53,358 nucleotides of DNA from Octopus bimaculoides (lineage: Eukaryota). Location of the stretch: contig NC_068995.1 in NCBI RefSeq assembly GCF_001194135.2, positions 4,137,241 to 4,190,598 of the forward strand, read 5' to 3'. The notes beneath the pieces were generated by a model. It saw only the letters and a program-made list of their open reading frames with translations, was not told the origin of the DNA and made no database searches. Both the position numbers and the translations under genes were made by a program. Shown piece by piece: positions 2,286 to 11,272 of the stretch (positions are counted from its first letter, which is position 1; the number at the start of each line of letters is the position of its first letter).

Positions 2286-5200
2286 TCATCGCACTGGAAT
2301 TTCAACGTCTCTCAGATCAGTTTTATCACCATGATTGTCTTCTTTCGCTGTTGAACTCATTAATCTTTGAGAATTCTCAATGGCATCACCAGAATGTGAC
2401 AATGTGTCAGCATGTTTTTCGTACGGGTTCTCGATTTTTCCTTTATTAACTCGGACAGCGTTAATTTTTCCTTCTTTGAACTTATTTGAAGAGGGTTGTG
2501 ACGAAGATCTTCGCGATATCACTTTGGATGTGAGATCGGTTTTACTCGACCCTAGTGAAATCTGTTCTCCATAATCAGTTCTATTTGTGTCTTTAAAATT
2601 ATTAAAGCTATCACTTTTCATCGGTAAAGCATATAAAACATTTAACGGCATATGAAGACTTTTTTTAGATAATTTCTTAGAGGGCTTAACTGAATTTGAG
2701 GGATTATGGGCATTAGGCAACTCTATGACTAGGGACGATGGATCTTGAATTCCTAAATACCGTTTCACTAACATTGTATGGCTGAAGTTCCGTTTATGTA
2801 GAGAAATCGTATTAGAAGGTTTTGCTGCCGTACGTTTAAACTTTTGGCGCCTTTTAGCAGCAAACTTACGATTAGCAATTAAGTAATTCCTTCCCACAAT
2901 TCGTTTACCGACAAATAAGGGATCCTCATCTCGTTTAGCTGATAACAAGGTATATCGATTTCGTTCACTATCTACTAGGGGATATTTAATTGTTTTACTT
3001 ACAAAAGAAGGCCCTGAATATCGCTTAATCCCATGAAAAAAATTTGACCGCAAACGTGAAATTTTATCTGCTGAAGATTCATCTTCTTTTCTTCTAAAAA
3101 TAGGTTTATTTATAGTTACTGATTCTAACTCCCGTTTATCATTAGATACTTGCTGATCGCCTTTTAGAGAATTTTTATTGTGTGTAACTAAATTCATAAG
3201 GCGCAATTTTCGTTTGCTTACAAGACCAGGGTTGTACTTTGACTTACCATTAACATATTGGGAAAGTCTATTTCCAAACTGGGTCTCACTAAACCCTCCT
3301 TTACTGAGTAATTCTGTGACGTGCTCACGTTTGCCAACAAACAAAGAATCTTCCTCTCGTTTACCGACAAACATGGGATCTTCTCTTTTACCGACAAACA
3401 TAGGATCTTCTCTTTTACCGACAAACATAGGATCTTCTCTTTTACCGACAAACATGGGNNNNNNNNNNTTACCGACAAACATAGGATCTTCTCTTTTACC
3501 GACAAACATAGGATCTTCTCTTTTACCGACAAACATGGGATCTTCTCTTTTACCGACAAACATGGGATCATCTCTTTTACCAACAGACATAGGATCTCTT
3601 TTACCGACAAACATGGGATCTTCCCTTTTACCGACGAACATTGGATCTTCTCTTTTACCGACAAACATAGGATTTTCTCTTTTACCGACAAACATGGGAT
3701 CTCCTCTTTTACCGACAAACATAGGATCTTCTCTTTTACCGACAAACATAGGATCTTCTCTTTTACCGACAAACATGGGATCTTCTCTTTTACCGACAAA
3801 CATGGGGTTTTCTCTTTTACCGACAAACATGGCGTTTTCTCTTTTACCAACAAACATATGATCTTCTCTTTTACCAATGAACATAGGATCTTCTCTTTTA
3901 CCGACAAACATGGGGTCTTCCCTTTTACCGACAAACACAGGATCTTCCCTTTTACCTATAAACATGGGATCTTCTCTTTTACCGTCAAACATGGGGTCTC
4001 CTCTTTTACCGACAAACATGGGATCTTCTCTTTTACCGACAAACATGGGGTCTTCTCTTTTGCCAACAAACATAGGATCTTCTCTTTTACCAACAAACAT
4101 AGGATCTTCTCTTTTACCGATAAACATAGGATCTTCTCTTTTACCGACAAACATGGGGTCTTCTCTTTTACCGATGAACATGGGATCTTCTCTTTTACCA
4201 ACGAACATGGGGTCTTCTCTTTTACCGATGAACATGGGATCTTCTCTTTTACCAACAAACATAGGATCTTCTCTTTTACCGATAAACATAGGATCTTCTC
4301 TTTTACCAACGAACATGGGGTCTTCTCTTTTACCGACAAACATTGGATCTTCTCTTTTACCAACGAACATAGGATCTTCTTTTTTACCGATGAACATGGG
4401 ATCTTCTCTTTTACCAACGAACATTGGGTCTTCTCTTTTACCGATGAACATGGGATCTTCTCTTTTACCGACAAACATGGAATCTTCTCTTTTACCGATA
4501 AACATAGGATCTTCTCTTTTACCAACGAACATAGGGTCTTCTTTTTTACCGATGAACATGGGATCTTCTCTTTTACTGACAAACTTGGTATCTTCTCTTT
4601 TACCGATGAACATTGGATCTTCTCTTCTACCAACAAACATGGGGTCTTCTCTTTTACCGATGAACATAGGATATTCCCTCTTACCAACAAACATATGATC
4701 TTCCCTTTTACCGACAAACATGGGGCCTTGTCGTTTACCGATAAACATGGGATCTTCTCTTTTACCAACGAACATAGGATCTTCTCTTTTACCTATAAGC
4801 ATGGGATGTTCTCTTTTACCGACAAACATAGGATCCTCTCTTTTACCGACAAACATGGGATCTTCTCTTTTACCAAGAAACATAGGCTCTTTCTCTCGTT
4901 TACCAACAAACATAGGGTCCTCTCTTTTACCGATGAACATAGGATCTTCTCTTTTACCGACAAACATAGGGTCCTCTCTTTTACCGATGAACATAGGATC
5001 TTCTTTCTTACCGACAAACATAGGTTGTTCTCGTTTACCAACAAATCTAGGCTCTGTCTCTCGTTTACCCACAAACATGGGATCTCCTCTTTTACCGACA
5101 AACATGGGGTTTTCTCTTTTACCAACAAACGTGGGATCTTCCCCTCGTTTACCCACGAACATGGGATCTCGTTTACTGACAAATTTAGGGTCTTTTTCAT

Positions 5201-7126
5201 GTTTCCCGACATTCATAGGCTCTTTCTCTCGTTCATCAGCAAACATGGGATCTTTCTCTCGTTTGCCAACGAACACAGGATCTTCCTCTCGTTTACCGAC
5301 AAAGACCGGATCCTCCTCTCGTCTACCGATAAACATAGGATCTTCTCGTTTCCCGGCAAACATAAGTTCTTTCTCTCGTTTACCAATAAACATAGGGTTC
5401 TTCTCTCGTTTACCTACAAACATAGGATTCCTTTTACCGACAAACATAGGCTCTTTCCCTCGTTTACCGATAAACATTGGATCTTCTCGTTTACCAACAA
5501 ACATTGGATCTTCTCTTCTACCAAGAAACATTGGGTCTTCATCACGTTTACCTACAAACATGGGATCTTCCTCTCGTTTACCAACAAACATAGGACCATT
5601 TCCCCGTTTCCCGACAAACATAGGATCTTCTCGTTTACCGACAAACACAGGATCATCCTCTCGTTTACCAACAAACACAGGATCATCGTCTCGTTTACCA
5701 ACAAACATGGGATTTTCCTCACGTTTACCGACAAACATTGGATCCTCCTCTCTTTTACGACCAAATACAGTCTCTCTGGAAAATGGCGCAACGAAAGCTG
5801 AGGGAAATGATGCCGGCTTTTGTCTTCCCGTTAAAAGCGTATCGTTATTTCGGAAAGAACGAAATATTAGATCCGGATCATGTATATTAGTATATACAGA
5901 TCTTGAATTTCGCTTTCTGGGAAATAACGGATGATCGTTTTGTCGTTTGCCTGCCAATGCAGAATCATAATGAAATCGTTTGCTTATAATAATGGGACCA
6001 TCTGGTTTGTTTAAAAATGTGTGATCCCGATATTGTTTTCCTCCAAATAAGGGCTCACCATGGAATGGTTTACCTGTATATATTACATTATCATCGTATA
6101 TGGGATCGCCTGGCTTGTTTGATATGTCCTGGTCTAGATAATCATGTGTAGGTAACTGATTATTATAACCTCTTTTTCCTACAAATAAGGGGTTATCATC
6201 TCGTTTGCCTACAAAAAGAGGATCATCATCTCGTTTGCCTACAAATAAAGGATTTTCTAGTTTTTGCTCACGATAATTCTGTTTGCTTCTAAATAAGGGA
6301 ACTTGTGTACCTGCTAACAAGGGATTTTCCTCCGAACGTCGTTTGCTTACAAATAATCGATGGTGTGAATTCTCAACGGAGAGAGGGTATTCACTCTTTT
6401 TACCTACAAACATGGGGTCTGGATTTCGTTTACCAACAAAAAAGGGATCTGAATCTCGCTTACCAACAAAAAAGGGTTCTGCATTTCGTTTACCAACAAA
6501 AAAGGGGTCTGAATCTCGTTTGCCTACAAAAAAGGGGTCTGGATTTCGTTTACCAACAAAAAAGGGATCTGAATCTCGCTTACCAACAAAAAAGGGTTCT
6601 GAATTTCGTTTACCTACAAAAAAGGGGTCTGAATCTCGTTTGCCTACAAAAAAGGGGTCTGAATGTCGTTTACCTACAAAAAACGGATCTGGGTCTCGTT
6701 TACCAACAAAGAAAGGATCTGGATCTCGTTTACCAACAAAGAAAGGGTCTGGATCTCGTTTACCTACAGAAAAGGGGTCAGAATTTCTCTTCCTAACATA
6801 TAAAGTGTTTGGATCCCTTTTACCAATGAACATGGGGTCTGGATCTCGTTTACCGACAAATAAAGTGTCTGGATCCTTTTTACCTACAAAGAATAGATCT
6901 GGAACCCGTCTACCAACAAAGAAGTGGTCCCGACCCCGTTTTCCTACAAAAAAAGGATCTTGATCCCTTTTTCCCACCAAAAATGGATCTGGGTCCCGTT
7001 TTCCCACAAAAAAAGGATCTGGATCCCTTTTGCCTATAAACATGGGGTCTGGATCTCGTTTATCAACATATAAATGATGTTGGTCGTTCCGTTTACCTAA
7101 CAACATTGTGTCCGGATCCTGTTTAT
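2286..7126 (-). CDS. Exon C: PXFVamide (Mytilus inhibitory peptide-type) precursor cassette, ~116 repeat units of [DE]x(x)PxF(V/I)-G-KR
   Basis: The 4.8 kb ORF is uninterrupted apart from a 10-N gap and consists of KR-flanked, Gly-extended peptides (DPDPFFV, DDDPLFV, EDPMFV, EDPMFI). Acceptor ctccacactttctttgcag|AT (AG 7128-7127), phase 1. The PxFV-amide C-terminus is the established signature of molluscan MIP/PXFVamide peptides (e.g. GSPMFVamide). Confidence 0.95.
3330..5760 (-). repeat. 27/30-bp coding tandem repeat, PMFV block (~88 units, EDPMFVGKR type)
   Basis: Plus-strand unit ttaccgacaaacatgggatcttctctt (27 nt); mostly 30-nt variants in the 5' part of the exon (higher coordinates); gap at 3459-3468. 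Confidence 0.95.
6395..7120 (-). repeat. 30-bp coding tandem repeat, PFFV block (~24 units, DPDPFFVGKR type)
   Basis: Plus-strand unit such as gaatctcgtttgcctacaaaaaaggggtct, repeated in exact 30-nt register. Confidence 0.95.
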
Positions 7127-7711
7127 CTGCAAAGAAAGTGTGGAGAATTTTCTTATTAGCTGATTTCATACCATTACTTTCTTTATATTATCCTTAATTA
7201 ATCTAGAATATTTCATATTTTTGTTGATATTCTTGTAACTAATTATATTTGCCAACGTGAAACAGTAACGGAAAAATATTTATATCAACGGACCAGCTTC
7301 GACGAATGACAATGTTTTGGCTATTTTTCTTTTAAGTTCTGGCGCATTACATATTCCATTTCGTTTTATACCTTCAGCTTTTCATCGCACGCTTCGGGGA
7401 TTTTCGTTGAATCTTCATATTTTCGTCCCACTGCATTATTCACGAAACGTTGAGTAAAATTCTTTGTTGAAAACATTTTTTCTCAGATCTTTAGCCAGGA
7501 AAAAAAGTGGTTTCATATGTGTTACTGCGTAAAGCATTTAAGCATAATGCAATAGCTGATTCCCTGATGTAGACTCTGTAACCATTCTAATTGCTATGAT
7601 GGTAGGTACTTAAAGGCACTAAATAATCTGTGATATTAATTTTGATAGATATAATTTGACTCCCGTGATTATAACTTATGATATAGTATTGTCTATTACT
7701 TTGCACTTATG

Positions 7712-7717
7712 TTTATT
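7712..7717 (-). terminator. Candidate polyadenylation signal (AATAAA) between exon B and exon C
   Basis: Plus-strand tttatt at 7712-7717 is AATAAA on the minus strand, ~720 nt after the exon B stop and upstream of the exon C acceptor. The hexamer is common in AT-rich DNA. Confidence 0.3.
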
Positions 7718-8436
7718 GCACAAAAGAATATGTTCTTCGCTATTGTTTGAAATGCTTGTCAAGAAGTTCTATCATTTTTCCAGTATGTTTTGGTGATATT
7801 TCGAATGAGAAAATTGTGACAACTATACCTGTAAACACGAAAAGGATGAGATATTCCATCACCCAAGACATCTGCGCAAGTATAGTATTAAGGTTCACCA
7901 AATGGATTGTAAATTGGAATATTAAAAGCCTTTTGTACGAAGCCAATCCATTTAAAACAGGGTTTGTTTTTTCTTTAAAAGGACAAATTCAGAAAAAAAT
8001 TGAATAAATTTGAAATTGCTATCTTGAGTCAAAGATCGCTGAAATGAATTGTGGAACGAATTTGGATATTGAATCCTATTAGCTAAGAATCTATCCTAAG
8101 AGCTACCTGCCAGCAGATTTAATTTGATGTTATTGGACATTCCTGAAACATTATTACCATTTGATCCACTTGTGTGAAGCATTTCAGTTACACCATTTAA
8201 CGTTGTTTGGAACGATTGTCACTTACCATTATTGAAACTTCCCCATATCCTGATGCCATTCAGATATTTCCAACGAAAAAAGGAGAGCAATAGTTTACCT
8301 TTTTCTTTCTAGATGACATTTTAAATGCTCAGACTATAAATTAAATCGCTAGTAATTTTCTGCAAGAAATGGTTTTCCCGCGTGTTTTTCTATCTATATC
8401 AGGAATATTAGCGAATCTCTAGTGTACACTCCAATT

Positions 8437-9218
8437 TCACTTACCGATTAATACAAAATATTTACCTTTACGTCTGAAAGTATTCCAAATTTTAAGATCA
8501 AGCAGTTTAGCTAAGGTTTCAGTAGCATTGTGCCAAATTCTCGGGTCCAACATTTCCAAATTATTCTTACCTAAAAATTCCATTGGACGCTTATCAAAGT
8601 AATCCAATTTTCTTTTCCCCAAAAATTCCATGGGGCGCTTTCCTAGGAATTCCATACCTCTTTTTCCAAGGAACTCCATTGGACGTTTACCTAAAAATTC
8701 CATTGATCGTTTTCCAAGAAATTCCATTGGTCTTTTCCCTAAGAATTCCATACGCCTTTTTCCCAAGAATTCCATCCGTCTTTTACCCAAGAATTCCATT
8801 CTTCTTTTATCATCTAAATCATCTGCTCTCTTTCCCAAGAATTCCATGGGACGTTTTCCCAAAAATTCCATAGGGCGTTTACCCAAAAATTCCATCGGTC
8901 TTTTTCCTAAGAATTCCATTGGTCTTTTTCCTAAGAATTCCATCGGTCTTTTACCAAGGAATTCCATCGGCCGTTTACCAAGAAATTCCATTGGTCTTTT
9001 ACCGAGAAATTCCATCGGCCTCTTTTCAAGACCTTCATCTTCGTCATCAGTATAGGCAATGAAAGGATCATTCATTACCGATTCATCTGGTAGCGCTACT
9101 TCACCGTTATCTTGCGTATGACCACTAGGGATGTTCAAATAGGAACTGCCTACAAGTGGCTTCATAACTGTGTCCTTCACTGCGTTTTTGACAGACTCTG
9201 AATCAGCGGCATTGTAAT
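8437..9218 (-). CDS. Exon B: EFLamide (xMEFLamide, TRH-type) precursor cassette, 17 copies (12 PMEFL, 3 RMEFL, 1 SMEFL, 1 GMEFL)
   Basis: The ORF has tandem KR-xMEFL-G-KR units (dibasic cleavage plus Gly amide donor) after an acidic pro-region. Acceptor ttgtgtttctttgtatttctag|AT (AG 9220-9219), phase 1; joining to exon A recreates GAT (Asp). The 3' end is ambiguous: stop at 8439-8437, or phase-1 donors after 8466 (G|GTAAAT) or 8445 (G|GTAAGT). Confidence 0.92.
8567..9026 (-). repeat. 24-bp coding tandem repeat (KRPMEFLG)
   Basis: About 19 in-register 24-nt units: 17 peptide copies plus 2 acidic same-length units, with synonymous variation at third positions. Confidence 0.95.
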
Positions 9219-10569
9219 CTAGAAATACAAAGAAACACAACAAATCAACGCAAGACATTCACACTACACCATGAATACCAGAGAAAACAGCAGCACCCAC
9301 AGCATCAGTATCGGGGGCAACAGCAGCAGAAAGACCAAAAATAGTAACCAATCATACAAAACTTAGCAAAACCTTAAACATTCTCTCCTCCATTTTATCT
9401 TCCATTCTACATATCCTCTCTGTACGCGCACGCGCCCGTGTGTGTGTTTATGTTTGTAATGTAAGTTTGTGTCTAACAGATTCCTCGAAAACAATCTGAC
9501 TAAAATGTCCAGTTAAAACATGGCGATGTAAAAATCAATAACTTCCATAAATGTTTGTCTGAAGATACGGATGTTCATTAGATCTGCTTGAAGCTACAAG
9601 TTTGGTTTTCGGTTGAACGAATTAAATTACTTATATCTAGCCCATGCTACTCACTACCTTTCTACTTTTCTCCCGTTCGTTAGTATACTTATATACATGT
9701 GTNNNNNNNNNNNNNNNNNNNNNNNNNNNNNNNNNNNNNNNNNNNNNNNNNNNNNNNNNNNNNNNNNNNNNNNNNNNNNNNNNNNNNNNNNNNNNNNNNN
9801 NNNNNNNNNNNNNNNNNNNNNNNNNNNNNNNNNNNNNNNNNNNNNNNNNNNNNNNNNNNNNNNNNNNNNNNNNNNNNNNNNNNNNNNNNNNNNNNNNNNN
9901 NNNNNNNNNNNNNNNNNNNNNNNNNNNNNNNNNNNNNNNNNNNNNNNNNNNNNNNNNNNNNNNNNNNNNNNNNNNNNNNNNNNNNNNNNNNNNNNNNNNN
10001 NNNNNNNNNNNNNNNNNNNNNNNNNNNNNNNNNNNNNNNNNNNNNNNNNNNNNNNNNNNNNNNNNNNNNNNNNNNNNNNNNNNNNNNNNNNNNNNNNNNN
10101 NNNNNNNNNNNNNNNNNNNNNNNNNNNNNNNNNNNNNNNNNNNNNNNNNNNNNNNNNNNNNNNNNNNNNNNNNNNNNNNNNNNNNNNNNNNNNNNNNNNN
10201 NNNNNNNNNNNNNNNNNNNNNNNNNNNNNNNNNNNNNNNNNNNNNNNNNNNNNNNNNNNNNNNNNNNNNNNNNNNNNNNNNNNNNNNNNNNNNNNNNNNN
10301 NNNNNNNNNNNNNNNNNNNNNNNNNNNNNNNNNNNNNNNNNNNNNNNNNNNNNNNNNNNNNNNNNNNNNNNNNNNNNNNNNNNNNNNNNNNNNNNNNNNN
10401 NNNNNNNNNNNNNNNNNNNNNNNNNNNNNNNNNNNNNNNNNNNNNNNNNNNNNNNNNNNNNNNNNNNNNNNNNNNNNNNNNNNNNNNNNNNNNNNNNNNN
10501 NNNNNNNNNNNNNNNNNNNNNNNNNNNNNNNNNNNNNNNNNNNNNNNNNNNNNNNNNNNNNNNNNNNNN

Positions 10570-11190: not shown

Positions 11191-11272
11191 CGATGAGATG
11201 CCCATTCTTAACCTGTCCCCAAACTGAGGCAGATAGAATTACCACAATGTACACAGACAAGTAGATCCTCAT
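11191..11272 (-). CDS. Exon A (first coding exon): signal peptide of the neuropeptide precursor, MRIYLSVYIVVILSASVWG/QVKNGHLI + 1 nt
   Basis: ATG at 11272-11270. Basic n-region (MR), hydrophobic core (IYLSVYIVVILSA), small-residue end (SVWG). Strong donor ATC G|GTATGT (intron starts 11190), phase 1, matching the phase-1 acceptors of both downstream peptide exons. 82 coding nt = 27 codons + 1. Confidence 0.82.

What the first reader, a model, noticed from the sequence alone, without database searches (positions are those of the whole stretch)
8437..9218. 17-copy xMEFLamide cassette: candidate cephalopod TRH-type ligand
Seen: 12 PMEFL-G, 3 RMEFL-G (after KRR, possibly released as MEFLamide), 1 SMEFL-G and 1 GMEFL-G, flanked by KR (the last copy ends in GK-N). 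Known: EFLamide peptides of annelids and arthropods activate receptors orthologous to the vertebrate TRH receptor. Inference: this is the octopus TRH-type precursor, embedded in a MIP/PXFVamide locus, and it could be missed if only the dominant A-C isoform is annotated.
Basis: partly seen in the sequence, partly recalled or inferred. Interest (0 to 1): 0.72.

Follow-up and report, generated by a model that had tools for sequence, protein, structure and literature searches.

The report
Octopus fulicin-type (EFLamide) neuropeptide exon
This is a real but unannotated exon of an Octopus bimaculoides neuropeptide gene; it encodes 17 copies of a five-residue amidated peptide (mostly PMEFL-amide) and is the octopus version of the molluscan fulicin / arthropod EFLamide family, the invertebrate counterpart of TRH, so it is a useful annotation fix but not a new kind of system.

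Summary
On the minus strand, 9218-8437 is one open exon with 17 xMEFLG copies (12 P, 3 R, 1 S, 1 G); chance expects 0.00. Across the copies the MEFLGK core shows 321 synonymous and 0 non-synonymous codon differences.

The window is Octopus bimaculoides. The exon lies between a signal-peptide exon (11272-11191) and a giant exon (7126-2286) encoding at least 109 PxFV/I-amide (MIP) copies. All junctions are phase 1 (G|AT, Asp). The deposited gene model (1246 aa) equals signal exon plus MIP exon and skips this exon.

The best matches are gastropod fulicin precursors and mussel exons carrying xMEFLGKR. In a whelk, a second gastropod and mussels, the fulicin exon shares a gene with a MIP exon. Published work shows the same for oyster and annelids.

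The literature treats fulicin, EFLGamide and EFLamide as TRH-type ligands. PMEFL-amide has already been detected in cuttlefish, filed under "PRQFVamide".

The one unusual feature is that the octopus EFL exon lies upstream of the MIP exon, not downstream. Expression of the exon and receptor activation remain untested.

The parts
11191..11272 (-). Exon A coding part. ATG at 11272; encodes MRIYLSVYIVVILSASVWGQVKNGHLI plus the first base (G) of a split Asp codon. Donor ATCG|GTATGT, phase 1. Predicted signal peptide shared by the alternative products.
   Evidence: Sequence read. Hydrophobic core has a Kyte-Doolittle 9-residue mean up to 3.0. The start of the deposited gene maps to this ATG (mapping checked).
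8437..9218 (-). Exon B, the finding: the fulicin/EFLamide-type exon. Acceptor ...tttgtatttctag|AT, phase 1. It holds 260 codons plus the TGA stop at 8439-8437.
   Evidence: Open for 273 codons in a 35% GC genome. The same G|AT (Asp) phase-1 junction is found in gastropod and mussel fulicin exons.
9019..9218 (-). N-terminal acidic spacer of exon B (DYNAADSESVKN...DDEDEGLEKR).
   Evidence: BLASTP finds no significant similarity to the mussel spacer.
8827..9018 (-). Repeat block 1: 8 x PMEFLGKR, giving PMEFL-amide.
8611..8802 (-). Repeat block 2: RMEFLGKR x3, then P-, S-, P-, G-, P-MEFLGKR. It is separated from block 1 by the spacer ADDLDDKR (8826-8803).
8563..8586 (-). Seventeenth copy, PMEFLGKN, after the spacer KLDYFDKR (8610-8587). 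Its Gly codon carries a donor-like site TAG|GTAAGA (cut 8571|8570, phase 1).
8437..8562 (-). Tail NLEMLDPRIWHNATETLAKLLDLKIWNTFRRKGKYFVLIGK plus TGA. It ends IGK-stop as gastropod fulicin precursors do (...YTEFIGK-stop). A second donor-like site TCG|GTAAGT (cut 8445|8444, phase 1) overlaps the stop codon.
2286..7126 (-). Exon C: giant MIP/PxFVamide exon. Acceptor tttgcag|AT, phase 1. It encodes 1613 aa including a 10-N gap at 3459-3468, with at least 109 Gly-extended peptides (48 ...PMFV, 20 ...PMFI, 13 ...PFFV). Stop at 2288-2286.
   Evidence: The deposited products (1246 aa and 389 aa) cover it.
8270..8283 (-). A lone PFFVG-coding motif (...KKKVNYCSPFFVGNI*) in the B-C intron, in the same frame as exon B but separated from it by several stops. 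Possibly a relic MIP copy.
   Evidence: it is the only match to the PFFVG-coding pattern outside exon C, and shuffles gave 0.00. One search gives the translation.

Best explanation
Exon B is the octopus orthologue of the fulicin (mollusc) / EFLGamide (annelid) / EFLamide (arthropod) exon of an ancient two-peptide gene that also encodes the MIP/PxFVamide peptides.

Proposed mechanism:
- Transcription starts at exon A, which supplies the signal peptide.
- Splicing A to C gives the annotated MIP precursor. Splicing A to B gives a precursor of about 288 aa.
- Prohormone convertases cut that precursor at the KR sites.
- A carboxypeptidase trims the basic residues.
- Peptidylglycine alpha-amidating monooxygenase converts the C-terminal Gly to an amide.
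- The products are 12 PMEFL-NH2, 3 RMEFL-NH2 (or MEFL-NH2), 1 SMEFL-NH2 and 1 GMEFL-NH2.

The precursor most likely ends at the TGA after ...IGK, as in other molluscs. Because exon B is symmetric (phase 1 at both ends), an in-frame A-B-C product is also possible. By orthology the peptides should act on the cephalopod TRH-receptor-type GPCR.

Shown here: the repeat structure, selection on the peptide sequence, the splice-phase architecture, linkage to the MIP exon, similarity to fulicin precursors, and absence from the deposited gene model. Inferred: use of the exon in mRNA, processing of the precursor, and the receptor.
For: - 17 copies against 0.00 expected by chance.
- 321 synonymous and 0 non-synonymous codon-pair differences in MEFLGK.
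- The top protein matches are gastropod precursors containing FNEFVGKR (the fulicin sequence, from my own knowledge; the oyster paper treats fulicin as the EFLGa orthologue) and PYEFL/PYEFV copies, at E = 1.6e-39 to 6.9e-27. Mussel exons with xMEFLGKR also match. One mussel cluster contains Mytilus coruscus CAC5401040.1.
- In Babylonia areolata, a 1025-aa MIP product and a 255-aa fulicin product share the same gene start. The MIP exon is followed by a fulicin exon in L007, L008 and mussel L001.
- The signal-exon donor and both alternative acceptors use the same phase-1 G|AT junction in octopus, whelk and mussels.
- Exon B ends IGK-TGA, like gastropod ...EFIGK-TGA/TAG.
- The 1246-aa deposited model equals A + C exactly.
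- Literature: the oyster MIP/fulicin gene is alternatively spliced and its peptides were seen by mass spectrometry, with fulicin equated to EFLGamide and TRH-type. Platynereis and Capitella carry FVa and EFLGa on one transcript. EFLa receptors are TRH-receptor orthologues. PMEFL-amide is present in Sepia hemolymph.
Against: - I could obtain no octopus transcript or peptide evidence. The genomic ORF is not on record, and the spliced product could not be looked up.
- Similarity to fulicin precursors rests on the short repeats. The non-repeat spacer and tail give no significant BLASTP alignment, and Pfam has no model for the family.
- The exon order is reversed relative to every other locus examined, so strict positional orthology needs a rearrangement.
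- No cephalopod receptor has been tested. The cuttlefish literature files PMEFL-amide with PRQFVamide-type peptides.
- An 867-N gap lies between exons A and B.
Confidence: 0.8

Rival explanations
1. PMEFL-amide is functionally a divergent member of the MIP / PRQFVamide (P-x-F-V-amide) group. Under this reading it is a PMF(V/L) copy with one inserted Glu, it acts on the same receptors as its exon-C neighbours, and it has nothing to do with TRH-type signalling.
For: Exon C contains PMFV (48), PMFI (20) and even PMFL (2) copies, so PM-E-FL differs by a single residue. Both sets sit in one gene. Cuttlefish workers filed PMEFL-amide under PRQFVamide prohormones. Conzelmann et al. regard FVa, FLa and fulicins as related.
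Against: The E-F-L-amide ending matches the protostome core signature E-[L/F]-[L/F/V] quoted for the fulicin/EFLGa/EFLa family. xMEFLGKR also occurs in mussel fulicin exons that lie beside classical GAPMFV/GSPMFI MIP exons, so the split between the two exon types predates cephalopods. Exon B shares the IGK-stop ending with gastropod fulicin precursors. None of the 17 copies has the P-x-F-V ending.
Confidence: 0.12
2. Exon B is a cassette exon that is always spliced onward to exon C through one of its two phase-1 donors. Octopus would then make one fused mega-precursor (MEFL-amides plus PxFV-amides) instead of a separate fulicin-type precursor.
For: Both donor-like sites (TAG|GTAAGA at 8571|8570 and TCG|GTAAGT at 8445|8444) are phase 1, like the exon C acceptor, so A-B-C stays in frame. 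The second donor removes the stop codon. No strong polyadenylation signal lies close to the stop; the nearest are ATTAAA at +313 and AATAAA at +719.
Against: In all other molluscs examined the fulicin exon ends at a stop directly after G or GK, and octopus keeps that IGK-TGA ending. GGTAAGTGA can arise from a synonymous change of GGC AAG TGA (the Babylonia sequence). The phase match has a one-in-three chance expectation per site.
Confidence: 0.2
3. Exon B is a decaying or unused relic (a pseudo-exon), or an independent small gene using its own ATG at 9258 (MSCVDLLCFFVFL...) as a makeshift signal peptide.
For: It is absent from the deposited annotation. The ORF does begin with an ATG followed by a short hydrophobic stretch. 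A PFFVG relic in the next intron shows that decay products exist in this locus.
Against: There are zero non-synonymous against 321 synonymous differences in the core. Acceptor, dibasic sites and amidation glycines are intact in 16 of 17 copies. The same peptide is detected in cuttlefish. The leader MSCVDLLCFFVFL is simply the translated polypyrimidine tract, and other molluscs use the shared signal exon.
Confidence: 0.05

Closest known systems
Crassostrea gigas MIP/fulicin gene LOC105328755 (Mar Drugs 2021, PMC8398477)
   Same: One gene with a shared signal exon produces a Mytilus-inhibitory-peptide (PxFV/I-amide) precursor and a fulicin precursor by alternative splicing. The fulicin peptides end in -(E/D)FL-amide and were seen by mass spectrometry. 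The authors equate fulicin with annelid EFLGamide and TRH-type signalling.
   Different: In oyster the fulicin sequence lies downstream of the MIP exon, sitting in the 3' UTR of MIP transcripts, and is reached by exon skipping or an alternative 3' splice site. In octopus it lies upstream of the MIP exon. The oyster peptides are (F/Y)S(E/D)FL(M)-amide; the octopus has 17 copies of xMEFL-amide.
Gastropod fulicin precursors (Achatina fulicin FNEFV-amide; Babylonia areolata LOC143299843 isoform X2; Batillaria BaRGS_021556)
   Same: They carry tandem X-X-E-F-(L/V/I)-G-KR pentapeptide copies. The precursor ends ...EFIGK-stop. The phase-1 G|AT junction follows a signal exon shared with a giant NPMFV-amide exon.
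   Different: Position 2 is Y/N/A/T rather than Met. The gastropod tail carries extra conserved peptides (YSEWLG, NPEFIG) that octopus lacks. The exon order is MIP then fulicin. No significant similarity exists outside the repeats. D-amino acid at position 2 is known for Achatina (my own knowledge) and unknown here.
Mussel (Mytilus and relatives) fulicin-type exons, e.g. within Mytilus coruscus CAC5401040.1
   Same: They have the same xMEFLGKR core (A/N/T/Y/G-MEFL) and the same acceptor phase. They lie 1.2 kb from a MIP exon encoding GAPMFV/GSPMFI.
   Different: They have only 5-6 copies and end in GDW(I/M)G-stop. Order is MIP exon first. The spacer is not alignable.
Annelid FVa/EFLGa precursor (Platynereis, Capitella)
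   Same: FV-amide peptides and EFL-type peptides are encoded by one locus or transcript. The EFLGa receptor is a TRH-receptor orthologue.
   Different: The annelid peptides keep an extra Gly (EFLG-amide). The EFLGa region follows a stop codon, and read-through was proposed. Order is FVa first.
Arthropod EFLamide (EFLa)
   Same: The C-terminal -EFL-amide is identical, and multiple paracopies are common outside pterygote insects. The peptide is classed as TRH-type by receptor orthology, and the Locusta receptor is activated by it. Unnamed marine metatranscriptome proteins with APGMEFLGKR copies matched the query.
   Different: There is no linkage to FV-amide peptides. In Hemiptera and Locusta the exon is spliced to Prohormone-4 instead.
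Sepia officinalis 'PRQFVamide' prohormones with PMEFL-amide (Zatylny-Gaudin 2016, as cited in PMC5736919)
   Same: The mature peptide is identical, PMEFL-amide, and is reported present in hemolymph.
   Different: The cuttlefish precursors were incomplete and were classified as PRQFVamide-related, not as fulicin/EFLamide/TRH-type. No gene structure was given. I could not read the primary paper.

Membership tests
Fulicin / EFLGamide / EFLamide (protostome TRH-type) precursors | Tandem short peptides with the core E-[L/F]-[L/F/V] at the C-terminus, followed by an amidation Gly and flanked by dibasic cleavage sites | tested here: met
   17 x X-M-E-F-L-G, of which 16 are followed by KR and all are preceded by KR. 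The signature is as quoted.
Fulicin / EFLGamide / EFLamide (protostome TRH-type) precursors | Sequence similarity to bona fide fulicin precursors | tested here: met
   The top hits are gastropod precursors containing FNEFVGKR and PYEFL/VGKR, at E 1.6e-39 to 6.9e-27. The score comes from the repeats.
Fulicin / EFLGamide / EFLamide (protostome TRH-type) precursors | Homology outside the peptide copies (spacer or tail) | tested here: not met
   BLASTP of the octopus tail against the Batillaria tail gives no alignment. The octopus spacer against the mussel spacer gives E = 17. This is usual for neuropeptide precursors, so it does not argue against membership.
Fulicin / EFLGamide / EFLamide (protostome TRH-type) precursors | In lophotrochozoans: co-encoded with FV-amide/MIP peptides in one gene, behind a shared signal-peptide exon | tested here: met
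   The order A (11272-11191), B (9218-8437), C (7126-2286) is on one strand, and all junctions are phase 1 G|AT. The same architecture occurs in Babylonia; L008 and mussels show the MIP-then-fulicin exon pair, and mussels the same acceptor phase and, per the literature, in oyster and annelids.
Fulicin / EFLGamide / EFLamide (protostome TRH-type) precursors | The precursor terminates directly after a final Gly(-Lys) | tested here: met
   Octopus ends ...VLIGK-TGA. Babylonia ends ...EFIGK-TGA, L008 ends ...EFIGK-TAG, and mussels end ...GDW(I/M)G-TAA/TGA.
Fulicin / EFLGamide / EFLamide (protostome TRH-type) precursors | The exon is used in mRNA and the peptides are made | not testable with these tools
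   No transcript data were reachable. Indirect support: PMEFL-amide is reported in Sepia hemolymph.
Fulicin / EFLGamide / EFLamide (protostome TRH-type) precursors | The peptide activates a GPCR orthologous to the vertebrate TRH receptor | not testable with these tools
   Shown only for Platynereis, C. elegans and Locusta in the literature. I did not search for the octopus receptor.
Fulicin / EFLGamide / EFLamide (protostome TRH-type) precursors | D-amino acid at position 2 (Achatina fulicin and fulyal) | not testable with these tools
   Chirality cannot be read from DNA. Position 2 here is Met.
MIP / PxFVamide (Mytilus inhibitory peptides) | C-terminal P-x-F-(V/I)-amide | tested here: not met
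   None of the 17 exon-B copies has it. Exon C has at least 90 such copies. Exon B is in the MIP gene but is not a MIP exon.
Deuterostome TRH precursors | Repeated Q-H-P-G (or Q-x-P-G) units giving pGlu-His-Pro-amide | tested here: not met
   No such unit occurs in the exon B translation. The link to TRH rests on receptor orthology only, as the literature states.
Sepia 'FLGamide' / orcokinin B-like peptides | C-terminal FLG-amide (needs FLGG) and a DS(L/I)GGG domain | tested here: not met
   There is only one Gly after FL and no GGG anywhere in exon B.

The most novel reading that the evidence does not exclude
In the octopus lineage the ancient FV-amide/EFL-amide gene was rearranged so that the EFL exon moved in front of the MIP exon and became a symmetric phase-1/phase-1 cassette. 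This would invert the splicing logic from 'skip the MIP exon to reach fulicin' to 'include or skip the fulicin exon'. One pre-mRNA could then yield three products: MIP only, fulicin only, or a fused precursor releasing a TRH-type peptide and about 110 inhibitory peptides from the same vesicles.
Probability: 0.2. Interest if true: 0.5.

Novelty: new member of a known kind. Interest (0 to 1): 0.36.

Why it matters
- It identifies the likely endogenous ligand for TRH-receptor-type signalling in cephalopods, where almost no peptide-receptor pairs have been deorphanised. The ligand is a five-residue peptide that is easy to synthesise.
- It suggests that the PMEFL-amide already seen in cuttlefish hemolymph has been filed under the wrong family (PRQFVamide instead of fulicin/EFLamide).
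- It exposes a gap in the O. bimaculoides gene model. Single-cell and bulk expression studies that count this locus as one 'MIP/PRQFV' gene would merge two different transmitter phenotypes.
- It extends the FV-amide/EFL-amide shared-gene arrangement to cephalopods, with a reversed exon order. That makes it a small but clean case of how alternative-splicing logic can change while the products are kept.

Tried and rejected
- **Pfam scan** of exon B and its relatives. Only spurious repeat-driven hits (PWWP_KDM3B and similar) appeared, and Pfam has no family model.
- **BLASTP of the non-repeat spacer and tail** against mussel and gastropod counterparts. Not significant. My by-eye alignment of the octopus tail with the gastropod LSEELLRQLV... 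segment is therefore dropped.
- **Taxon of P0004-P0008.** I first took these for decapodiform cephalopods. Cluster look-up showed they are bivalves (Mytilus coruscus is a member), so I corrected this.
- **Transcript evidence.** No other octopus or cuttlefish protein with this exon is in the protein collection.
- **SRA run numbers** of the Logan contigs appear in no paper in the library.
- **Polyadenylation signals** after the stop (ATTAAA at +313, AATAAA at +719) are uninformative in an AT-rich intron.
- **Possible duplicate of the exon B tail** about 215 nt downstream. Only 18 nt at 89% identity, E = 0.07, so it is not supported.
- **Second EFL exon downstream of exon C.** None in the 10 kb examined, although 2.2-kb and 0.5-kb gaps remain.
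- **Sepia 'FLGamide'** is orcokinin B-like and unrelated.
- **Zatylny-Gaudin 2016** could not be read.
- **Not run.** I did not use the representative-library HMMER search or the third homologue search. Any protein sharing the EFLGK/FLGKR words had already been collected.

Full report
**1. The observation**

The feature is on the minus strand. Translating 9258-8437 gives one open frame of 273 codons. It holds exactly 17 X-MEFL-G units: 12 PMEFLG, 3 RMEFLG, 1 SMEFLG and 1 GMEFLG. Each is preceded by KR. Sixteen are followed by KR and the last by KN.

- A degenerate DNA pattern for MEFLGK matches 17 times in the 53-kb window, all within this stretch. One hundred dinucleotide-preserving shuffles gave 0.00.
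- Tandem Repeats Finder sees a 24-nt array of 18.7 copies.
- The copies are far from identical at the DNA level. Leu uses five codons, Gly three and Phe two. Yet across all copy pairs the MEFLGK core shows 321 synonymous and 0 non-synonymous codon differences. This indicates purifying selection on the peptide, not a recently amplified satellite.
Base 9218 is the first exonic base after the acceptor tttgtatttctag|AT, and 8437 is the last base of the TGA stop.

**2. Where it sits**

The window is Octopus bimaculoides, assembly GCA_001194135.2, chromosome CM046615.1. Three coding exons lie on the minus strand.

- **Exon A (11272-11191)** encodes MRIYLSVYIVVILSASVWGQVKNGHLI, a typical signal peptide. 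It ends ATCG|GTATGT in phase 1.
- **Exon B (9218-8437)** is the finding.
- **Exon C (7126-2286)** is a 4.8-kb exon. It has a 27-nt array of 88 copies and a 30-nt array of 22 copies. It encodes at least 109 Gly-extended peptides ending PMFV (48), PMFI (20), PFFV (13) and similar. These are Mytilus-inhibitory-peptide (MIP, PxFV/I-amide) peptides.

Both B and C begin with AT after an AG acceptor. Either one therefore completes the split codon G|AT (Asp) left by exon A.

Exon B also offers two donor-like sites, TAG|GTAAGA at 8571|8570 and TCG|GTAAGT at 8445|8444. Both are phase 1.

B and the start of C lie on one gap-free stretch (3469-9702), so their order is not a scaffolding artefact.

The deposited gene has a product of 1246 residues running from the exon A ATG to the 10-N gap inside exon C. 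That length equals 82 nt of exon A plus 3656 nt of exon C, so exon B is not in the model. The part of exon C after the gap is annotated as a separate 389-aa protein.

**3. Relatives**

A search of about 5.8 billion protein clusters with exon B returned 13 hits.

- **Gastropods.** The best hits (E = 1.6e-39 to 6.9e-27) include Batillaria attramentaria, and a further hit is Babylonia areolata 'isoform X2'. They contain FNEFVGKR, which is the sequence of fulicin from Achatina (my own knowledge). They also contain many PYEFLGKR/PYEFVGKR copies and end ...YTEFIGK-stop.
- **Bivalves.** The next group carries A/N/T/Y-MEFLGKR copies. I first took these for squid or cuttlefish. Cluster look-up showed that one cluster contains Mytilus coruscus CAC5401040.1, so they are bivalves. 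The xMEFL-amide motif is therefore shared by mussels and octopus.
- **Unnamed sequences.** Weaker hits include unnamed proteins from ENA, JGI and marine metatranscriptome (merc) collections with APGMEFLGKR or APGMEFVGKR copies, and an unnamed protein with a signal peptide and nine GSEFLGKR copies. These look like EFLamide-type precursors, but their taxa are unknown.

**4. Conserved gene architecture**

- In Babylonia the NCBI annotation gives two products from the same gene start, one of 1025 aa and one of 255 aa. The first uses an exon with about 70 NPMFVGKR copies. The second uses a fulicin exon 5.9 kb further downstream.
- A second gastropod contig (L008) and a mussel contig (L001) show the same pair, MIP exon then fulicin exon, 4.6 kb and 1.2 kb apart.
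- In Babylonia the signal exon ends in phase 1 with G, and both its alternative exons start with a two-base completion of the codon. The Babylonia and mussel fulicin exons use the same G|AT Asp junction as octopus exons B and C.
- Every fulicin exon stops directly after a terminal G or GK. Octopus ...VLIGK-TGA matches gastropod ...EFIGK-TGA/TAG.
- Outside the peptide copies I found no significant similarity, and Pfam has no model. Orthology therefore rests on the repeat motif, the gene architecture and the linkage.

**5. What the literature already says**

- In the Pacific oyster, one gene (LOC105328755) yields long and short MIP precursors and a fulicin precursor by alternative splicing. The fulicin peptides, (F/Y)S(E/D)FL(M)-amide, were detected by mass spectrometry.
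- The oyster authors equate fulicin with annelid EFLGamide. EFLGamide activates the annelid TRH-receptor orthologue, and they give the protostome core signature E-[L/F]-[L/F/V].
- Platynereis and Capitella encode FV-amide and EFLG-amide peptides on one transcript.
- Arthropod EFLamide is treated as TRH-type, and the Locusta receptor responds to it. A 2025 paper lists mollusc fulicins among TRH-type peptides.
[quoted passage not shown] The peptide is therefore already known from a cephalopod, under another family name.
- I found no open paper that calls it fulicin, EFLamide or TRH-type, or that gives a cephalopod gene structure.
- The Sepia 'FLGamide' family is orcokinin B-like and unrelated.

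**6. Most likely mechanism**

Exon A provides the signal peptide. Splicing A to C gives the MIP precursor, and splicing A to B gives a fulicin-type precursor of about 288 aa. Convertase cleavage at KR, carboxypeptidase trimming and amidation of the C-terminal Gly would release 12 PMEFL-NH2, 3 RMEFL-NH2 (or MEFL-NH2), SMEFL-NH2 and GMEFL-NH2.

The seventeenth copy (GKN) has only a single basic residue after the Gly, and it coincides with a donor-like site.

I think the TGA after IGK is the real end of the precursor, because that ending is conserved in gastropods. An in-frame A-B-C fusion through the GTAAGT that overlaps the stop cannot be excluded.

The receptor is inferred from orthology only. 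Expression of exon B in octopus is inferred from selection on the sequence, from the intact processing and splice signals, and from the cuttlefish peptide.

**7. What is different**

In every other locus I examined, and in the oyster and annelid descriptions, the FV-amide part comes first and the EFL part second. In octopus the EFL exon comes first.

No second EFL exon was found in the 10 kb downstream of exon C, although two gaps remain there.

A lone PFFVG-coding motif sits in the B-C intron at 8283-8270, in exon B's frame but cut off from it by stops. It is the only match to that coding pattern outside exon C, and shuffles gave 0.00. It may be a relic of the rearrangement.

The copy number, 17, is also higher than in the mussel exons (5-6).

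**8. Verdict**

It is not a new kind of system. It is the cephalopod member of the known MIP/fulicin (FVa/EFLGa) gene, and its main peptide has already been seen in cuttlefish. What remains useful is the annotation fix, the reclassification of PMEFL-amide as the candidate TRH-type ligand of cephalopods, and the reversed exon order.

Interest is moderate to low (0.36).

Noticed in passing
window 8270-8283 (-): A lone PFFVG-coding motif (...KKKVNYCSPFFVGNI*) lies in the intron between the EFL exon and the MIP exon, in the same frame as exon B but separated from it by stops. It is the only match to the PFFVG-coding pattern outside exon C, and shuffles gave 0.00. It may be a decayed MIP copy left by the exon-order rearrangement.
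   Followed up: partly
window 2286-9218 (-) compared with L001, L007, L008: The exon order is reversed in octopus (EFL exon, then MIP exon) relative to whelk, a second gastropod, mussels and the published oyster and annelid genes (MIP/FVa first). No second EFL exon was found in the 10 kb downstream of exon C, but 2.2-kb and 0.5-kb gaps remain there.
   Followed up: partly
window 3459-3468 and L006: A 10-N assembly gap inside the giant MIP exon makes the deposited annotation split one precursor into two proteins (1246 aa and 389 aa). The real product is about 1,640 aa or more, with at least 109 PxFV/I-amide copies and an unknown number lost in the gap.
   Followed up: yes
window 9219-9258 (-): The open frame continues upstream of the acceptor to an ATG at 9258 (MSCVDLLCFFVFL). 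This is the translated polypyrimidine tract and looks superficially like a short signal peptide. A prokaryote-style ORF caller would report a false 273-aa 'gene' here.
   Followed up: partly
P0031 (Mytilus coruscus CAC5401040.1); L001 1785-2351: The deposited Mytilus coruscus model fuses the MIP exon and the fulicin-type exon through retained intronic sequence (...GSPMF|LILVIMLEEKD|DLGDSDAV...), so it is probably a mis-spliced prediction. Mussel fulicin exons end in GDW(I/M)G-stop, which resembles the single QGEWV-amide reported for the oyster fulicin precursor.
   Followed up: no
window 8226 (-): A third strong donor-like site, ATG|GTAAGT, lies 211 nt downstream of the exon B stop. If it were used, exon B would keep its stop codon and exon C would become 3' UTR, which would mirror the oyster arrangement.
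   Followed up: no
window 11300-53358: The remaining 42 kb upstream of the gene holds no convincing coding ORF of 110 aa or more. It is rich in (TA)n, (CA)n and (GA)n microsatellites that flank nearly every assembly gap (17 N runs, 10-867 N).
   Followed up: partly
window 8630-9055 (+): The antisense strand of the cassette is also open for 141 codons (MGRFPRNSIPLFPRNSIG...). This is a by-product of the 24-nt periodicity and is not evidence of a gene.
   Followed up: no
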